The notes under the pieces: model-generated
The model's database searches: none
What the model saw: only the letters and a program-made list of their open reading frames with translations
What the model was told of the DNA's origin: nothing
From: Octopus bimaculoides
Taxonomy: Eukaryota
Reading direction: 5' to 3'
DNA length: 64,000 bases
Assembly (NCBI RefSeq): GCF_001194135.2
Contig: NC_068987.1
Location: 105,776,131 to 105,840,130, forward strand
Shown here: piece after piece, positions 8,986 through 60,671 of the stretch
Layout: each line of letters opens with the position of its first letter
Position numbering within the stretch: position 1 is the stretch's first letter
Translations under genes and position numbers: made by a program

Positions 8986-9287
8986 GTGGAGGCGCAATGG
9001 CCCAGTGGTTAGGGCAGCGGACTCGCGGTCATAGGATCGCGGTTTCGATTCCCAGACGGGCGCTGTGAGTGTTTATTGAGCGAAAACACCTAAAGCTCCA
9101 CGAGGCTCCGGCAGGGGATGGTGGCGAACCCTGCTGTACTCTTTCACCACAACTTTCTCTCACTCTTACTTCCTGTTTCTGTTGTGCCTGTAATTCAAAG
9201 GGTCAGCCTTGTCACACTGTCATGCTGAATATCCCCGAGAACTACGTTAAGGTACACGTGTCTGTGGAGTGCTCAGCCACTTGCACG
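8986..9287 (+). mobile_element. SINE family B (tRNA-like head), 3' end lost in gap
   Basis: GGAGGCGCAATGGCCCAGTGGTTAGGGCAGCGGACTCGCGGTC...GGTTTCGATTCCC; near-identical to 21952-22334 and 41043-41434. Confidence 0.9.
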
Positions 9288-10847: not shown

Positions 10848-10850
<3 letters not shown>

Positions 10851-11035
10851 TCAAATTTACAGAAAACAAAAGACGAAGACAGGTGTAGGAACAAGAAGCA
10901 GGTGTATTAGTTTAACGCTCTGGAAAGAATGGAAAAGTCTTTTACGTTTCAAGCCTACGCTCTTCGTCAGAAAGGATTAGGAGGAACAAAAATGGGGAGA
11001 GAATGAAAAACGGTCCAATATGGTAAGATGACTGG
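10848..11035 (-). mobile_element. Repeat family F: PLE-terminal-repeat-like element carrying a hammerhead motif
   Basis: Second copy at 44111-44290 starts at the same AGT(T/C)CAAATTTA(C/T)AGAAAACAAAAGACGAAGAC point; contains CTGACGAAGAGCGTAGGCTTGAAACGTA on the minus strand. Confidence 0.7.
10939..10974 (-). ncRNA. Minimal type I hammerhead ribozyme motif (family F)
   Basis: CUUU-CUGACGA-A-GAGC(GUAG)GCUU-GAAAC-GUA-AAAG: stem I CUUU/AAAG, 4-bp stem II with closing G.U, palindromic ACGU stem III, GUA cleavage triplet. Confidence 0.6.
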
Positions 11036-17539: not shown

Positions 17540-17570
<31 letters not shown>

Positions 17571-17752
17571 ATATATAATGTTTCGGCTCTAATATTAATC
17601 GAGTTACTCTCCCACAATCACTAGTACATACAGGTTATCGGTATCCAATGGTGGGCCATAGCGTATTATATAGCGCATGGCAATAATAGAGAAAAGAACA
17701 TGGCCATAACTTACTAATCTTTTATTTCAGTTGCTACATATGTTTCGTAAAA

Positions 17753-18071
17753 TCGTGTGGCTTAGTGGTTCGGCTATTCGGCATACGATCGTAAGGTCAT
17801 GATTTCAATTCCCAGCGACGCGTTGTGTTCTTGAGCAAGACACTTTATTCAAGTTGCTCCAGTCCATTCAGCAGGCAATAATGAGTAGTACCTGTATTTC
17901 AAAGGGCCAGCCTTGTCACACTCTGTGTCATGCTAAATCTCCCCGAGAACTACGTTAAGGGTAAACGTATCTGTGGAGTGCTCAGTCACTTGGCACGTTA
18001 ATTTCACGAGCAAGCTGTTCCGTTGATCGGATCAACTGGAACCCTCGTCGTCGTAAGCGACGGAGTGCTAG
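17753..18071 (+). mobile_element. Chimeric SINE: family D-like CORE head joined to family B 3' half
   Basis: 5' GTGGCTTAGTGGTT...TTGTGTTCTTGAGCAAGACACTTTATT as in family D; 3' TTCAAAGGGCCAGCCTTGTCACAC...GACGGAGTGC as in family B. Confidence 0.8.
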
Positions 18072-18592
18072 TACATATGTTTTAGTATTTGGCAACATAT
18101 GATATCACACTACAGATACAGCAAGTAGGTGCAGCTTAAACGCAAAAATGCAGCAAACACCTCATCAGACAATCGATAAAGAAGTGCAAGTTAGAGACAA
18201 GCTGTAACACAGCAAGCAAATGCNNNNNNNNNNNNNNNNNNNNNNNNNNNNNNNNNNNNNNNNNNNNNNNNNNNNNNNNNNNNNNNNNNNNNNNNNNNNN
18301 NNNNNNNNNNNNNNNNNNNNNNNNNNNNNNNNNNNNNNNNCCACAAGATGGACTGGTGCTATGCGCATGTACACCCGCATATATGTGAGCGCATATATAT
18401 GTACGTGTGTGCATACGCCCGTATAAAGGTGCGTGTCCATGTACACGCATACTGTGTTGTATATATGTGTGCGTTTGGGCGTCTCCGCGTGTTTGTGTCT
18501 GTGCGTGTGCATGTATGTGCATTTGTATGCACATGTGTATATATGTACGTATAAGTAGGTAGTTTGTTTGAGCATGTGTGTGTCTGTCAGTC

Positions 18593-18594
18593 AC

Positions 18595-18658
<64 letters not shown>

Positions 18659-18686
18659 CCTATCTACCTATCTATCTATCTATCTA
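18593..18686. repeat. (TATC)n microsatellite
   Basis: Direct observation; similar tract at about 33760-33940. Confidence 0.95.
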
Positions 18687-18934
18687 TAAATATGTATATG
18701 TGTATGAATATACATGAATGTGTGTTTGTGTATCTATGTATATATATATTATTCTTATATTTTATGTGTGCGTATGTGTTTTAAAGCTTGCATCTATGTG
18801 AGTGTGTGAGAGTATATATATTTCGTATTGTTGTTACATCCATGTTTATGCTTGTATACTCACACGTGTCTGTACATATGCGTGCACCCGTACTTATTAT
18901 GTCAATATGAATATATAGAAGGTTTACCGATCAT

Positions 18935-18976
18935 AACTGTCCGACGAACGGTAACGTGAAACTCTGAGTTACAGTT
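18935..18976 (+). ncRNA. Type I hammerhead ribozyme motif with U4C substitution
   Basis: AACUGU-CCGACGA-ACG(GUAA)CGU-GAA-ACUC-U-GAGU-U-ACAGUU: 6-bp stem I, 3-bp stem II with GNRA loop, near-palindromic stem III, GUU triplet. Confidence 0.7.
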
Positions 18977-19534
18977 TGTGAAGATATTTGGAGTTTAATA
19001 AAAGTAAATACACGCGCACGCACACACATACACGATATCAGCTATAATCTGTGTATTTATATTTATACATGTATCTGTAAAATACATGGAGTTACGGTGA
19101 TAAATCACCTTAACTTGTGGTTCAACACTGGTATATTTATAAAGTCCCGAAAGATATCTATATCTCGTATATTAAAGATATTGAGATTGCCTGAAAGATT
19201 TATACGTATGTATAGAGTTGAAACTAGAAATATTTTAAAAGTTGTTTTCGAAGCAGTGTAATATTGAAATGCGTGACAACTTTTAATAAACAGAAATCTA
19301 TAGGTTAAAAGAATAAATCTCCATATAGAAAATATTATGAATGAATTACTTAAATAGATCAAATATAATGGATGAATTTACTTCTCAAAATGATGAACAT
19401 TTTAAAATCCTCTGCTAGAATCCACACATCTATTTAAAGCGTAAATGCGTAAATGTGAAATATAGCTTTACCTACATTCAAAGGAAGAATAAAATTTATA
19501 TACATATACATATACAAATAATATATAACATGAA

Positions 19535-19585
<51 letters not shown>

Positions 19586-20171
19586 CATTTACCATATCCA
19601 ATACGTTTTAGCAGTTGTAATTTAAAAGAATATAACATTTTACTAAATTTTATTTATTTACTGGTATATCTGTATTGTCACGAATTCCATCTATTTTAAT
19701 CACATGCTTTATTTGAATTTTCCATATTGTTTTGCAATTTCGTCTTTCTCGCAGATTTTCACTGTTTCACGTGTTACTTAATCTTCACTCCAATTCTATC
19801 ACTTTCAAGACGAGCGGATGCAATAATATATATTTATTATTTTAAGGTATATACTGCTTAAATTATACACCATTAAAGAACTTTTGCTCGTTGAAACATC
19901 ATAAAGGAATTATAATTATTCGATACTAGCAATGCTGTCACACTTTCGTTGCTATATAAAATAAAATAAAATAATAAAAAAGTTGAAATGCGCTACAAAA
20001 GATTAATCATAAATACCATTATAAAAATATACTAAAGTGGTATAGAAAGGAGCATGTAGATTTTAAATAACTAATATGATACTATGATAATGCAAGTTTT
20101 ATTTTCAACACGCCATCCCAAGCAAAATATCTTCTCAAAGAACTACTGAAAAAAGAAAATATAAGATATAC

Positions 20172-20393
20172 GCGCAGGAGTAGCTGCATGGTAAGAAGCC
20201 TGATTCCCAACAACATGGTTCCGGGTTCAGTCCCACTGCATGGCATCTTGTGCAAGCCTCTTTCACTATAGCCTCGGGCCAATTTGGTGGACGAAAACTG
20301 AAAGAAGCCCGTCTTATATATATATATATGTATATATATGTATATATATATCTGAAAAAAGAAAGGACTGACCTAAGGTTTTCAAACATTTTT

Positions 20394-20445
<52 letters not shown>

Positions 20446-20560
20446 CTGTGTATGTCTCCTACCGCCTCTTGACAACCGGTGTTGGTGTGTTTCTGTCCTA
20501 GTAAATTAGTTGTTTGACAAAAAAAAACAAAAAAAACAAACAAGAAAATAAGTACCAGGC
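20172..20560 (+). mobile_element. SINE family C with internal (TA)n(TG)n
   Basis: GCGCAGGAGTAGCTGCATGGTAAG...GGTTCCGGGTTCAGTCCCACTGC...GAAAGAAGCCCGTC-(TA)n...CTTGACAACCGGTGTTGGTG. Confidence 0.8.
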
Positions 20561-20574
20561 TTAAAAAGTAAAAG

Positions 20575-20745
20575 GTATTGCCAGTATTTCATCTGTCTTT
20601 GCCTTCTGAGTTCAAATTCCGCCGAGGTCGATTTTGTCATTCATNNNNNNNNNNNNNNNNNNNNNNNNAGTTGCGTACTGGGGTCAATCTAATCGACTGG
20701 CCTCTCCCCCAAAATTTCGGGCCTTGTGCTTAGAGTAGAAAAGTC
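20575..20745 (+). mobile_element. SINE family A (tail type 1)
   Basis: TTCTGAGTTCAAATTCCGCCGAGGTCG...CTGGGGTCAATCTAATCGACTGGCCTCTCCCCCAAAATTTCGGGCCTTGTGCTTAGAGTAGAAAAG. Confidence 0.85.
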
Positions 20746-21089
20746 TGGTGACTAAATCAAGTAAAAAAAAAAAATAATAAGTGAAATGATATATCTACGT
20801 CGAAATAGATGTGTCGCTAAGATGATTCTTCTTCTTCTTCTTATTTTCTCTTGCAACTATGTTGTTTCGGGTTCAATCCCACAACACTGTAACTTCGGCA
20901 AATTCCTACGGCAATAAACTCGAATTATTTCTGACTTTATAAATGAAATTTGACGGACGAAAGCCGCGCATAACGCTGCCGGAACAGCTTCAATTGGTGC
21001 AATGTGAATCCTCCTCCTTTTTCATTCGACAAGGCATAGGGACGCTGAGTATCAATGGCGTTGCTTAAATCTCCTTAGTCACACGGAAA

Positions 21090-21525
21090 AGAATATTCTT
21101 GTCTACTCTAGGCACACGGTACGAAATTTTGGGAGAGGGGGCCAGTCGATTAGATCGACCCCAGTACGCAACTGGTACTTAATTTATCGACCCCGAAAGG
21201 GATGAAAGGCAAAGTCGACCTCGGCAGAATTTGAACTCAAAACGTAAAGACAGACGGAATACCGATAAGCATTTGCCTGGTGTGCTAACGTTTCTTATTT
21301 CTTTATTGCCCCCTAAACATAGAGGGGACAGGCAAGGACGGACAAAGGGTTTAAGTCGACTACATCGACCCCAGTGCATAACTGGTACTTAATTTATCGA
21401 CCCCGAAAGGGGTGAAAGGCAAAGTCGTCCAAGGTGGAATTTGAACTCAGAACGTAAAGACAGACGAAATACGCATAAGCATCCCCGCCCCCGGCGTGTT
21501 AACGTTTCTGCCAGGTTGCAGCCTT
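21090..21525 (-). mobile_element. Two tandem SINE family A copies (tail type 1 at about 21090-21295, tail type 2 at about 21296-21525)
   Basis: Two consecutive ATCGACCCCAGT..CAACTGGTACTTAATTTATCGACCCCGAAAGG cores with different 3' tails. Confidence 0.9.
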
Positions 21526-21951
21526 ACGGAAAAGAATATTAATTCAGTAATTATTTCTAACACAAGTCCAAGTAGAAAAATTTCAACGGGAAGTTAAGTC
21601 GAATACATCTCTCTTAGTTGCTGGCAGATACTTCATTTTATCCAATTCCGGAAGGTTGGAAACTAGTGTTGACTTCAGTGAAATTTGAACCCCGAGAGTA
21701 AAAGAGCCGCAAGAAACACCGTAAGGCACTTCGACAAAACTCCAGTGTTGCACTTCGATTAAGGAGGAGACTAATTATATTCTCATTGACGCTAAATGTC
21801 AGATGAATCTCTCCTACATTGAAAGTTAACAATTTCACTTGTCTTGACAGTATCTTCCGTTTTCTGTTTCGTCTAGCTTTTCGCTTTATACATTCCATCA
21901 GCCCACGTTTTAATATCTGCCTGTTCATTAATTACTATAGTATGATGGAAT

Positions 21952-22334
21952 GATAGCTCTCCGTCGCTTACGACGTCGAGGGTTCCAGTTGATCCGATCA
22001 ACGGAACAGCCTGCTCGTGAAATTAACGTGCAAGTGGCTGAGCACTCCACAGACACGTGTACCCTTAACGTAGTTCTCGGGGATATTCAGCGTGACACAG
22101 TGTGACAAGGCTGACCCTTTTGCATTACAGGCACAACAGAAACAGGAAGTAAGAGAGAGAGAAAGTTGTGGTGAAAGAGTACAGCAGGGTTCGCCACCAT
22201 TCCCTGCCGGAGCCTCGTGGAGCTTTAGGTGTTTTCGCTCAATAAACACTCACATCGCCCGGTCTGGGAATCGATACCGCGATTCTATGACCCCGAGTCC
22301 GCTGCCCTAACCACTGGGCCATTGCGCCTCCACT
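21952..22334 (-). mobile_element. SINE family B, full-length, 12-bp TSD with one mismatch
   Basis: Complete head-to-tail match to 41043-41434; flanked by GTATGATGGAAT (21940-21951) and GTGTGATGGAAT (22335-22346). Confidence 0.92.
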
Positions 22335-27040: not shown

Positions 27041-28107
27041 AGTCAAAAGTTTTTTCGTATTTCAAGCTTTAATTAATAGTTCAAAGAAATTACATTTATT
27101 CAGCAAAATATATCCCATCATATTCTATTGTCTGTTGCCATGGTTTTGTTAGGAACTCAATTCCACTCTTATAACATTTGACTGGTTTAGAGGCAAAATA
27201 TCTCTCTGCAGCTTTTTCTTAACTATTATCCATATTGTTGAGTTTCCGTTCGGTAATTTGATGTTGCAAGGTCTGGGCTGTAGAAAGGGTGAAGCAGCAC
27301 TACCAGCCATTCAAGTTTCTAAGTTTGTGCTTGTTCATATTGGTAATGTATGCTGAGGCATTGTAATGCTGTAGAAGAGCGCGTTTTCGATTAGCTAACG
27401 TCTTGTAATGGACTTTCAGAGCATCATATACTCGCTGCAATTCTTGAGCATTCACAGGAAAACTATCTGGGACAAACGCCTTCGAAATTCTACCATAGTA
27501 CAACATAAAGTACAGTCTAAACTGCCCTTGTTTGACAACAAGTTTTGGAGCCTGGCCGTAAAGAAATCGGTGATTTCTCTTATTAGGATTACGAAAATAT
27601 ATCCATTTTTCATCCCCAGTTCATGAAGAGTCTCTCGACAGCATCATTTTAGATATTAGAAGAATGAACTTATAAATATGTCAATTGATGATGCCTTGTG
27701 AAGGACCAATTCGTGCTTGTGCTTGGCTGTTGTTCACGCATTTCAAGCAAGGCCTCATCTTCCCCCAAAAGTCTCTCCGACTTCGTTTTATCTTTGAGGC
27801 TGGTATCGCCTTCCTTTGTGTCACATGTTCGTTTATTGTTTCTGGATCTTCCATATCATTAATCTCTTTAGCCACAGTCCTTGCACAAGTAGAGTAGAAG
27901 GGTTCTTTTCGCATTTGTTTAGCACTCATTATCGAAACTGTAGAACAGAGAACAAATTATGACTGTCTTTATGTTATATATAAAAATAGAAAATAAACAA
28001 TTCCGTAACGATTGGACAAAGTTTTCATCGAATTAATAATATACCATGGAGATACAAGTTGCCAAAATCATCAGTGAACATTCGAATACACTTTTGACTC
28101 AACCTGA
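27041..28107 (-). mobile_element. Decayed mariner (DD34D-type) DNA transposon
   Basis: Minus-strand translations: GDTSLKDK (HTH-linker-like), TGDEKWIYFRNPNK, LLQHYNASAY (HDNA-like), LHPFYSPDLATSNY (YSPDLAPSD-like), C-terminal FASKPVKCYKSGIEFLTKPWQQTIEYDGIYFAE*; right end TA|TCAGGTTGAGTCAAAAGT, with AGTCAAAAGT also at the left end beside a gap; multiple stops and frameshifts. Confidence 0.9.
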
Positions 28108-54401: not shown

Positions 54402-55551
54402 ATATACGTATACATATGTATACATATATGCATCTTTGTATGTGTATACATATATATAGTGTGTAAAATATTAGAGCTAATGTAACCATCTAAAGGATAA
54501 ATGTATATATATATAACGGAGAATCATTGTTGGGGATGCAGTAGGTTCTCCCCAAGAAAAACAGAGAAGTGCATGGTGTGGTGCAGAACGGTGTGTGAAT
54601 CTCCTTCTCTCTCTCTGACACACACACACACACACACGCACGCACACACACATACACACACACACATACACACGTGCACGTACACATATATGTGTATGTG
54701 TATATACGTGCTTATAAGTATATAGATATATTTGTGTATATATGTATATATCAACATACATACATGCATACACACACACACACACATATATATATACATG
54801 CATGCATACACACGGACACAAACGGCATACACATACACACACACAAACACACCAAAACCCCACCATAAGCCAAGAAATATAAGGACACCACTAAATTTCG
54901 TATTTCGGAATAGTGGTTTTCAAAACATTGGTCGAGAAGTAGAATGTTCGTCAAATTTTCAATACAACTCAAAACATGCTAAAAGTGTGAGCAAATTTAT
55001 TTATTAACGCATTCAACAATTGTCATAATTCTCAAAAATATATAACCTTTAGAAACAGGTAGTATATAAATCAGAATGAATAAATTTAATTCTTACAGAA
55101 TTTGGCATTCGGTAAAAGTTGCGAATCAGTTATTCTTTTATTCTTTTTATATGATTTCAGTCGTAGGGCAATGGCTACACTGGAGCACCGCTGTAACTTA
55201 TTTTCTATCGGATTTGTTGTTGCATTACAGCAGGAAGTTGGAATATGATTGAGTTTATTGCAGCTGATCTTCCCTCATTGTACCCTTGAATGCTTGAATA
55301 ATCCAGATCCGTAATAAGGTGTTTTGAATATTTCAGTAGATATTCCATTTATACTTCTGATTTCTTTATGTAAGCAAATGAACAGCTGAGGACCTTTAAA
55401 TATCACTATAAACATTCACTCGGAGCTCTGTGATCTCCGCCTACACCGTTTACTCAACCTCAGCCCGCCTGTCTTTCCATCTCTAGTGAAACTTGTTGCG
55501 TTCAATCACCTTAGCCCCACTCTCGCCATTATAGTTAATCTTTTCTCCATA

Positions 55552-56052
55552 GGCGCACGAGTGACTGTATGGTAAGTAGCTTGCTTACCAACCACATCGT
55601 TCTGGGTTCAGTCCCACTGCGTGGCACCTTGGGCAAGTGTCTTCTACTATAGCCTCGGGCCGACCAAACCTTGTGAGTGGATTTAAGACGGAAACTGAAA
55701 GAAGCCCGTCGTATATATGCATTCATATATATGTATGTGTGTGTGTGCGTATATGTTTGTGTGTGTGTGTGTGTGTATATGTTTGTGTGTGTGTGTATAT
55801 GTTTGTGTGTGTGTGTATATGTTTGTGTGTGTGTGTATATGTTTGTGTGTCTGTGTTTGTCCCCCCCAGCATCGCTTCACAACCGATGCTGGTATGTTTA
55901 CGTTCCTGTAACTTAGTAGTTCGGCAAAAGAGACCGATAGAATAAGTACTAGGTTTACAAAGAATAAGTCCTGGGGTCGATTTGCTCGACTGAAGGCGGT
56001 GCTTCAGCATGGCCGCAGTCAAATGACTGAAACAAGTAAAAGAGTAAAGAGT
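55552..56052 (+). mobile_element. SINE family C, full-length, with expanded internal compound microsatellite
   Basis: GGCGCACGAGTGACTGTATGGTAAG head, GGGTTCAGTCCC, CORE-like CACCTTGGGCAAGTGTCTT, internal (GTGTGTGTGTATATGTTT)n, tail ending GTAAAAGAGTAAAGAG. Confidence 0.92.
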
Positions 56053-60476: not shown

Positions 60477-60632
60477 GGCGCGGCTGTGTGATAAGAAGCT
60501 TGTTTCACAACACATGGTTCCGGGTTCAGTCCTATTGCGTGGCACCTTAGGCAAGTGTCTTGTACTATAGCCTTGAGCCGACCAAAGCCTTGTGAGTGGA
60601 TTTGGTAGACGGAAACTGATAGAAGCCCGTCG

Positions 60633-60635
<3 letters not shown>
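60477..60635 (+). mobile_element. SINE family C, 5' half running into (TA)n and a gap
   Basis: GGCTGTGTGATAAG...GGTTCCGGGTTCAGTCC...GGAAACTGATAGAAGCCCGTCG. Confidence 0.85.

Positions 60636-60671
<36 letters not shown>

What the first reader, a model, noticed from the sequence alone, without database searches (positions are those of the whole stretch)
18935..18976. Stand-alone type I hammerhead with GNRA-capped stem II and near-palindromic stem III
Seen: AACUGU/ACAGUU 6-bp stem I, which can extend past a small internal loop via UCA/UGA. Stem II is ACG-GUAA-CGU, followed by GAA. Stem III ACUC-U-GAGU can fold as a 3-bp hairpin or as an 8-bp intermolecular duplex. The cleavage triplet is GUU. 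The only core deviation is U4C (CCGACGA). An AATAAA follows about 20 nt downstream. It shares no sequence with the other hammerheads here and sits among microsatellite-like DNA with no recognisable element. Inference: it is the remnant terminal repeat of a separate PLE or retrozyme family, or a natural U4C variant.
Basis: partly seen in the sequence, partly recalled or inferred. Interest (0 to 1): 0.7.

Follow-up and report, generated by a model that had tools for sequence, protein, structure and literature searches.

The report
Lone, probably inactive hammerhead-like motif
A 42-base stretch can be drawn as a small hammerhead ribozyme, but it is altered at two of the most conserved positions, has no second copy and no mobile-element context, so it is most likely a chance look-alike or a dead relic, not a working ribozyme.

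Summary
Helix I is 6 bp (AACUGU/ACAGUU), the core box reads CCGACGA, helix II is ACG-GUAA-CGU, followed by GAA, then helix III ACU-CUG-AGU and the GUU site. The motif is uncommon. A type I descriptor allowing one core mismatch expects 0.11-0.14 hits per window, 0.02 with a 6-bp helix I, and about 0.0007 for a motif this compact.

Nothing else supports a ribozyme:
- It departs from consensus at U4 (C) and at the 10.1-11.1 pair (A-U, not G-C).
- The hammerhead fold is disfavoured (-3.1 against -6.1 kcal/mol; 0.7% of the ensemble).
- No Rfam hammerhead model matches. This is weak evidence, because real minimal hammerheads in the window are missed too.
- It is single-copy in the window and absent from the three searchable collections.
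- It has no 150-450 bp tandem repeat, no flanking direct repeat and no protein domain nearby.

Three Penelope-like-element (PLE) type minimal hammerheads do occur in the window (10939-10974, 44201-44236, 45484-45529, all on the minus strand). None is related to this motif.

Chance and dead relic are about equally likely. An active U4C variant is unlikely. Only the source genome or a cleavage assay can decide.

The parts
18931..18933 (+). UCA, optional distal extension of helix I (pairs with UGA at 18979-18981 across a U/UG internal loop)
   Evidence: Read from the sequence. It adds about -1.8 kcal/mol to the drawn fold. A 3-bp extension with a free internal loop is not statistically meaningful.
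18935..18940 (+). Helix I, 5' strand (AACUGU)
   Evidence: Perfect 6-bp complement of 18971-18976.
18941..18947 (+). Core box 1, CCGACGA. The consensus is CUGANGA. C at 18942 replaces the invariant U4.
   Evidence: The published type I descriptor requires ^cuganga. In published curation any core mutation disqualifies a hit (PMC3088659).
18948..18957 (+). Helix II hairpin, ACG-GUAA-CGU (3 bp, GNRA loop). The 10.1-11.1 pair is A-U instead of G-C.
   Evidence: G10.1-C11.1 is described as highly conserved in PMC4209133 and PMC3088659.
18958..18960 (+). Core box 2, G12 A13 A14 (GAA)
18961..18969 (+). Helix III, ACU-CUG-AGU (A15.1-U16.1 plus 2 bp, 3-nt loop). It is near-palindromic and gives 4 bp + U.U + 4 bp between two copies.
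   Evidence: dimer cofold at -20.7 kcal/mol.
18970..18970 (+). Position 17 (U). Cleavage would fall between 18970 and 18971 (GUU triplet).
   Evidence: Inferred from hammerhead numbering. No cleavage data exist.
18971..18976 (+). Helix I, 3' strand (ACAGUU)
18979..18981 (+). UGA, partner of the optional helix I extension

Best explanation
This is a solitary hammerhead-like sequence that does not act as a ribozyme. Most likely it is a fortuitous match to the very small hammerhead consensus, lying in unique, AT-rich, microsatellite-flanked non-coding DNA of a repeat-rich eukaryotic draft assembly.

If the region is transcribed, the RNA would mostly adopt another fold. In that fold GUAAC (helix II loop and 3' strand) pairs with GUUAC (the cleavage site and the start of helix I), which hides the scissile bond. 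The few molecules that reach the three-way junction would carry C in place of U4 and A-U in place of G10.1-C11.1. They would have only 3-bp helices II and III and no partner copy to form the dimer that such weak helix III motifs need. Self-cleavage would therefore be negligible.

Shown: the sequence, its rarity, the fold energies, and the lack of copies and context. Inferred: the lack of activity and the chance origin.
For: - Two departures sit at the most conserved places. U4C fails the published descriptor and curation rule. The 10.1-11.1 pair is A-U.
- U4C is reported to 'considerably decrease activity in vitro' (PMC3088659).
- The hammerhead fold is -3.1 against an MFE of -6.1 kcal/mol for the 42-mer. 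All three stems together make up 0.7% of the ensemble. With flanks the values are -5.4 against -13.4. The z-score against shuffles is -0.5.
- It is single-copy in the window.
- There is no tandem repeat, no protein domain in six frames of 18341-20644, and no flank homology to the real hammerhead repeats.
- No Rfam hammerhead model matches down to about 7.5-9 bits.
- No relative turned up in three public collections. The one pattern hit, L001, lacks helices I and II.
- A loose one-mismatch descriptor yields 0.11-0.14 chance hits per window for one topology alone. My extrapolation from these rates gives tens to hundreds of motifs of this quality in a gigabase genome.
- The authors of the field's surveys state that chance matches are expected, and they discard motifs that join no family.
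Against: - At the quality actually seen (6-bp helix I, both hairpins at most 12 nt) the chance expectation is only about 0.0007-0.0008 per window. The GNRA loop on helix II makes it rarer still.
- All three helices are perfect, and the 42-mer is 45% G+C in flanks of 26-37%.
- The same window holds three genuine PLE-type hammerheads, against 0.0004 expected for the exact-core form. One has a mutated core, so hammerhead-derived DNA, including decayed copies, is common in this genome.
- The Rfam negative is weak, because those genuine motifs are missed too.
- The source genome was never searched.
Confidence: 0.5

Rival explanations
1. It is a dead relic of a real hammerhead. On this reading a solo, truncated copy of a hammerhead-bearing retroelement (a PLE terminal repeat or a retrozyme-like repeat, from a family not otherwise present in this window) suffered a T-to-C change at position 4 and no longer cleaves.
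For: - A motif this compact is rare by chance, at about 0.0007 per window.
- The helices are perfect and helix II has a GNRA loop.
- Reverting C4 to U would pass the published type I RNAMotif descriptor with score 11, where 13 or less is accepted.
- The architecture (6-bp helix I, short near-palindromic helix III) resembles the canonical metazoan type I form described in PMC4209133.
- The window holds three PLE-type hammerheads in two families, one with an A6U core.
- PMC4209133 reports that most such motifs occur as single, highly variable elements from truncated PLEs.
Against: - There is no second copy and no flank homology to anything in 64 kb, whereas the real family A shows 164 bp at 84% identity between its two copies.
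- There is no RT or GIY-YIG remnant and no tandem array.
- A-U at 10.1-11.1 would need two coordinated changes from G-C, or an atypical ancestor.
- The real families here have a different architecture: an unpaired A after A9, G at 10.1, and GAAACGU with no helix III. No exact-core three-helix hammerhead exists in the window.
Confidence: 0.35
2. It is an active natural core variant. On this reading the U4C / A10.1-U11.1 hammerhead still self-cleaves at GUU, alone or helped by host factors, and processes a local transcript.
For: - A natural U4C hammerhead in a viroid keeps enough activity in vivo for infectivity (Ambros and Flores 1998, as cited in PMC3088659).
- Rare natural core variants and very short helices II are documented.
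- Isolated, non-tandem type I hammerheads exist in mammals (PMC7229834).
Against: - The motif combines U4C, a non-G-C 10.1-11.1 pair, 3-bp helices II and III and the less favoured GUU site.
- No recognisable loop-loop contact is present to compensate.
- The active fold is 0.7% of the ensemble.
- No partner copy is available for a dimer.
- There is no evidence of conservation or of transcription.
Confidence: 0.08
3. It is part of some other, unrecognised element (an untranslated region, or another structured RNA on either strand), and its hammerhead-like look is incidental.
For: The stretch 18891-19003 is unique sequence between microsatellite tracts.
Against: - No Rfam family matches on either strand.
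- The fold is no more stable than shuffles, with a z-score of -0.5.
- The contig piece has no ORF with a Pfam match and no tRNA.
Confidence: 0.05

Closest known systems
Canonical metazoan type I hammerheads of non-LTR retrozymes (Schistosoma, newt and axolotl, mussel, coral; PMC7229834, PMC4209133)
   Same: Both are type I (open helix I), with a 6-bp helix I followed by an internal loop, a short helix II and a weak, near-palindromic helix III that could be extended in a dimer. Both sit in a low-GC genomic setting.
   Different: Those motifs have an exact core, G10.1-C11.1, usually a 4-bp helix II with loop 1-loop 2 contacts, an even-length perfect palindrome in helix III, and 150-450 bp tandem repeats. 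This one has U4C, A-U at 10.1-11.1, a 3-bp helix II with a GUAA loop, a central U.U in the palindrome and no tandem copy.
Minimal hammerheads of Penelope-like element terminal repeats (PMC4209133), including the three in this window
   Same: They occur in the same genome, often as solo and highly variable motifs, are predicted to work only as dimers, and have low intrinsic activity. The string GACGAA is shared with the two exact-core copies here.
   Different: PLE motifs have an unpaired nucleotide after A9, G at 10.1, a longer helix II (4-8 bp) and no helix III or a 1-bp one (GAAACGU). They sit in repeats that flank an RT-GIY-YIG ORF. The candidate has none of these and no sequence homology to them.
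Natural U4C hammerhead of a viroid variant (Ambros and Flores 1998, cited in PMC3088659)
   Same: The same substitution at core position 4.
   Different: The viroid ribozyme is otherwise a full hammerhead in a replicating RNA, with peripheral contacts and a demonstrated in vivo function. Here U4C is combined with further weaknesses and there is no evidence of function. I could not read the original paper.
Hammerhead-like false positives in database surveys (Perreault et al. 2011, citing Ferbeyre et al. 2000)
   Same: A small motif that fits a relaxed consensus, is single-copy, joins no family and shows no conservation. Such hits are expected by chance and are discarded by curators.
   Different: This one is more compact and better paired than the typical chance hit.

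Membership tests
Hammerhead ribozyme (any type) | Invariant core box C3 U4 G5 A6 N7 G8 A9 | tested here: not met
   The sequence reads CCGACGA, with C at position 4 (18942). Perreault et al. disqualify any core mutation.
Hammerhead ribozyme (any type) | G12 A13 A14, A15.1-U16.1 pair, H17 (not G) | tested here: met
   GAA at 18958-18960, A18961 pairing with U18969, and U18970.
Hammerhead ribozyme (any type) | Three helices radiating from the core, paired next to it | tested here: met
   Helices of 6, 3 and 3 bp with no mismatch and no G.U. They are at or near the minimum lengths, and the junction fold is only 0.7% of the ensemble.
Hammerhead ribozyme (any type) | G10.1-C11.1 closing pair of helix II (highly conserved, though not absolutely) | tested here: not met
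   A18948-U18957. Conservation is stated.
Hammerhead ribozyme (any type) | Passes the published RNAMotif type I descriptor (Perreault 2011, Text S1) | tested here: not met
   The descriptor requires seq=^cuganga, so the candidate is not retrieved. Scored by hand, the C4U revertant would get 11, where 13 or less is accepted.
Hammerhead ribozyme (any type) | Match to Rfam hammerhead covariance models (Hammerhead_1, _3, _II, HH9, HH10) | tested here: not met
   No hit at gathering score or at E<=10 on 64 kb, 211 nt or 57 nt, where other hits of 7.5-9 bits were listed. Caveat: exact-core PLE minimal hammerheads in the window are also missed.
Hammerhead ribozyme (any type) | Loop 1-loop 2 tertiary contacts that give activity at physiological Mg2+ | tested here: inconclusive
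   There is a GUAA loop on helix II and a U/UG internal loop after 6 bp of helix I. No known contact pattern is recognisable, and a single sequence cannot show covariation.
Hammerhead ribozyme (any type) | Related copies with compensatory changes in the helices | tested here: inconclusive
   None in the window or in metagenome, viral or prokaryote collections. The source genome could not be searched.
Hammerhead ribozyme (any type) | Site-specific self-cleavage | not testable with these tools
   Needs an in vitro transcription and cleavage assay.
Metazoan non-LTR retrozyme | Type I hammerhead repeated in head-to-tail units of 150-450 bp | tested here: not met
   TRF finds only periods of 1-13 bp in 17540-20644. 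BLAST finds no second copy, with 594 nt upstream and 1,668 nt downstream available before the gaps.
Metazoan non-LTR retrozyme | Expression as small circular RNAs | not testable with these tools
   No transcriptome is available.
Penelope-like element terminal-repeat hammerhead | Minimal architecture: unpaired nt after A9, G10.1-C11.1, long helix II, helix III absent or 1 bp with an even palindrome | tested here: not met
   The candidate has a 3-bp helix II starting with A-U and a 3-bp helix III with an odd loop. The three real PLE-type motifs in the window do fit.
Penelope-like element terminal-repeat hammerhead | Sits in one of two direct repeats flanking an RT-GIY-YIG ORF | tested here: not met
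   No direct repeat of 18890-19003 occurs anywhere in the window. Six frames of 18341-20644 give no Pfam domain. Assembly gaps at 18224-18340 and 20645-20668 limit the test.

The most novel reading that the evidence does not exclude
The motif is a working, solitary hammerhead of an undescribed family. It would tolerate C at core position 4 together with an A-U 10.1-11.1 pair, and cleave a host transcript in an invertebrate genome outside any retroelement.
Probability: 0.06. Interest if true: 0.45.

Novelty: not a real feature. Interest (0 to 1): 0.15.

Why it matters
If it were active, it would be a rare natural hammerhead with a changed U4 and a non-canonical 10.1-11.1 pair, standing alone in an animal genome. 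That would interest people who study how much variation the catalytic core tolerates. U4C already has a natural precedent, so the gain would be modest. As things stand, the value of the result is mainly cautionary. One-mismatch hammerhead look-alikes turn up at roughly one per ten 64-kb windows. Rfam's hammerhead models miss the minimal retroelement forms. A verdict therefore needs family evidence from the whole genome, not the drawing alone.

Tried and rejected
1. Rfam at gathering score and at E<=10 on 64 kb, 211 nt and 57 nt gave no hammerhead. I do not treat this as strong, because the same searches miss the exact-core PLE motifs.
2. A second site with the same odd core, CCGAUGA-ACGG...UCGU-GAAA at 41382 (-), looked like a possible relative. 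It lies inside a repeated SINE-like element (copies at 21956-22177, 17885-18068 and 9141-9287). It has no helix III or helix I, and its similarity to the candidate is matched or beaten by 16% of shuffles. Rejected.
3. Exact-pattern scans of metagenome, viral and prokaryotic contigs gave nothing for the specific 24-mer. A pattern with free helix II bases gave one metagenome hit, L001, which has no pairing in helix II or helix I. I take it as chance.
4. Attempts to reach the source genome failed. Exact look-ups of four window ORFs found nothing. A homology search with the retroelement-like ORF 45085-45414 (-) gave only two weak ENA hits on contigs of about 1 kb. The organism stays unidentified.
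5. Pfam on window ORFs gave only sub-threshold DDE_3 and NOA36 hits. Six-frame Pfam of the contig piece gave nothing.
This was corrected.
7. The AATAAA downstream is not informative.
8. The Ambros and Flores 1998 paper could not be read.

Full report
**What is there**

The window looks like a draft eukaryotic assembly. It has 20 runs of N (6,708 bases), about 35% G+C, and many TG, TA and TCTA microsatellites.

The 42-mer at 18935-18976 (+) reads AACUGU CCGACGA ACG-GUAA-CGU GAA ACU-CUG-AGU U ACAGUU.
- Helix I is a perfect 6 bp, and UCA/UGA can extend it across a U/UG internal loop.
- Helix II is 3 bp with a GNRA loop.
- Helix III is 3 bp with a 3-nt loop. Between two copies it would form 4 bp + U.U + 4 bp.
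- The cleavage triplet is GUU.
- C replaces the invariant U4.

**Is it more than chance?**

I used a type I descriptor: at most one mismatch in CUGANGA, exact GAA, A15.1-U16.1, H17, helix I of at least 4 bp, and helices II and III of at least 3 bp. It finds only this site in the window.

| Stringency | Simulated sequence, 2,618 window-equivalents | 7,554 decoy cores on the real window |
|---|---|---|
| Loose descriptor | 0.136 per window | 0.11 |
| Helix I at least 6 bp | 0.019 | 0.023 |
| Also both hairpins at most 12 nt | 0.0008 | 0.0007 |

A first-order Markov null agrees. Allowing the other two topologies and mismatches in GAA would raise these figures a few-fold.

A hammerhead-like drawing of some kind is therefore expected in about one window in ten. 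One this compact is expected in roughly one window in a thousand. By extrapolation, that still means tens of such sites in a gigabase genome.

**Tests of the ribozyme reading**

- *Core.* The published RNAMotif type I descriptor demands ^cuganga, so the site would not be retrieved. Reverting C4 to U would give a score of 11, where 13 or less is accepted. In the curated alignments of that study any core mutation disqualified a hit.
- *Fold.* The hammerhead structure of the 42-mer is -3.1 kcal/mol against an MFE of -6.1, and all three stems together make up 0.7% of the ensemble. With flanks the values are -5.4 against -13.4. The preferred fold pairs GUAAC with GUUAC and buries the cleavage site. 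Stability is ordinary, with z = -0.5. Two copies would cofold into a double-hammerhead-like dimer (-20.7 kcal/mol), but no second copy exists.
- *Covariance models.* No Rfam hammerhead family matches at gathering score, or at E<=10 on 64 kb, 211 nt or 57 nt, where unrelated hits of 7.5-9 bits were listed. I checked this test against genuine motifs, described in the section below on other hammerheads in the window. They are missed as well, so the negative is weak.
- *Copies.* The 42-mer is unique with up to 3 mismatches, and short-word BLAST finds no second copy of 18890-19003.
- *Context.* There is no tandem repeat with a period above 13 bp in 17540-20644, no tRNA, and no Pfam domain in any of the six frames of the piece between the gaps.
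- *Relatives elsewhere.* Two patterns scanned against metagenome, viral and prokaryotic contigs gave a single hit, L001. It has no pairing in helices I or II, so I take it as chance. The source genome itself could not be reached.

**The other hammerheads in the window**

Once I allowed the unpaired base after A9, three PLE-type minimal hammerheads appeared on the minus strand:
- 45484-45529: acac CUGACGA a GGCUGG...UCAGCC GAAACGU U gugu
- 10939-10974: cuuu CUGACGA a GAGC-GUAG-GCUU GAAACGU A aaag
- 44201-44236: the same design as the second, with core CUGUUGA (A6U)

The exact-core form is expected 0.0004 times per window, yet two are present. The second and third lie in copies of one repeat (164 bp at 84% identity), and helix II keeps its pairing through base changes.

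These are real, and they show that this genome is rich in hammerhead-bearing repeats, including decayed ones. The candidate shares no flank homology with them and has a different architecture. No exact-core three-helix hammerhead occurs in the window.

**Weighing the explanations**

For a real origin:
- The motif is compact and its helices are perfect.
- Helix II carries a GNRA loop.
- The 42-mer is 45% G+C in an AT-rich setting.
- Real hammerhead repeats are dense nearby.

Against a real origin:
- It departs from consensus at two of the most conserved positions.
- GUU is a less favoured cleavage site (from general knowledge of hammerhead site preferences, not tested here).
- The palindrome in helix III has odd length.
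- It has no copy, no repeat structure and no element context.
- Its design differs from the families actually present.

My rough rate estimates for 'chance motif with these features' and 'real-derived motif with these features' come out within a small factor of each other. I therefore put chance at about 0.5 and dead relic at about 0.35. Both mean no function.

An active U4C variant gets about 0.08. A natural U4C hammerhead is known from a viroid, but its activity in vitro is considerably reduced and is thought to be rescued by peripheral contacts. Here the other features weaken the ribozyme further and do not compensate.

**Comparison with known kinds**

The drawing is closest to the canonical metazoan type I hammerhead of non-LTR retrozymes. 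That form has a 6-bp helix I, a short helix II and a weak palindromic helix III, and is active as a dimer. The candidate fails the features that define membership: an exact core, G10.1-C11.1 and 150-450 bp tandem repeats. It also fails the features of PLE terminal-repeat hammerheads. By the practice of the field it would be set aside as a hit that joins no family.

**Verdict**

Function is unlikely, and interest is low. The decisive steps are a search of the source assembly and its relatives for family members, and a cleavage assay of the wild type against the C4U revertant, as monomer and as dimer.

Noticed in passing
window 45484-45529 (-): An exact-core PLE-type minimal hammerhead: gacac CUGACGA a GGCUGG-AGGGUAUA-UCAGCC GAAACGU U guguu. 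It has a 6-bp helix II, a 5-bp helix I (counting a terminal G.U pair), an unpaired A after A9 and no helix III. Such motifs are expected 0.0004 times per window by chance. Rfam does not detect it.
   Followed up: partly
window 10939-10974 (-) and 44201-44236 (-); repeat copies 10848-11010 and 44111-44273: Two copies of a second hammerhead-bearing repeat (164 bp at 84% identity). One has the exact core CUGACGA and the other CUGUUGA (A6U). Helix II keeps its pairing through base changes (G.U to G-C, C-G to U.G).
   Followed up: partly
window 44201-45529 (-): Two minimal hammerheads of different families lie 1.3 kb apart in the same orientation. They flank an ORF (45085-45414, minus) whose product contains ...RRLRWYGHVMRM...GRWRPRK...DRDLWR, which looks to me like the C-terminal tail of a non-LTR retrotransposon protein (from memory). 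It has no Pfam hit and only two weak database relatives.
   Followed up: partly
window 41200-41500, 21956-22177, 17885-18068, 9141-9287: A repeated SINE-like element present in at least four copies (88-95% identity). One copy contains a CCGAUGA...GAAA string that mimics part of a hammerhead core.
   Followed up: partly
window 20168-20341, 55549-55738, 60483-60669: Another short interspersed repeat (about 75% identity between copies). It carries a GGTTCCGGGTTCAGTCCC stretch that looks like a tRNA-type internal promoter box, but ARAGORN calls no tRNA in 17540-22000, which includes the 20168-20341 copy.
   Followed up: no
window 27303-27620 (-), 42534-42908 (-): Degraded Tc1/mariner-like transposase fragments. 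The second has a weak DDE_3 match (E = 0.004, below the Pfam cutoff). The first has no Pfam hit, and I call it mariner-like only from the motif GDEKWIYFRNP.
   Followed up: no
whole window: A method note. At E<=10, Rfam lists 169 sub-threshold matches; the 150 shown are almost all miRNA-precursor families (mir-297, mir-3149, mir-466 and others), with a few snoRNA and sRNA families, mostly on TG, TA and TATG microsatellite DNA. I take all of these as low-complexity artefacts. There are 20 assembly gaps.
   Followed up: no
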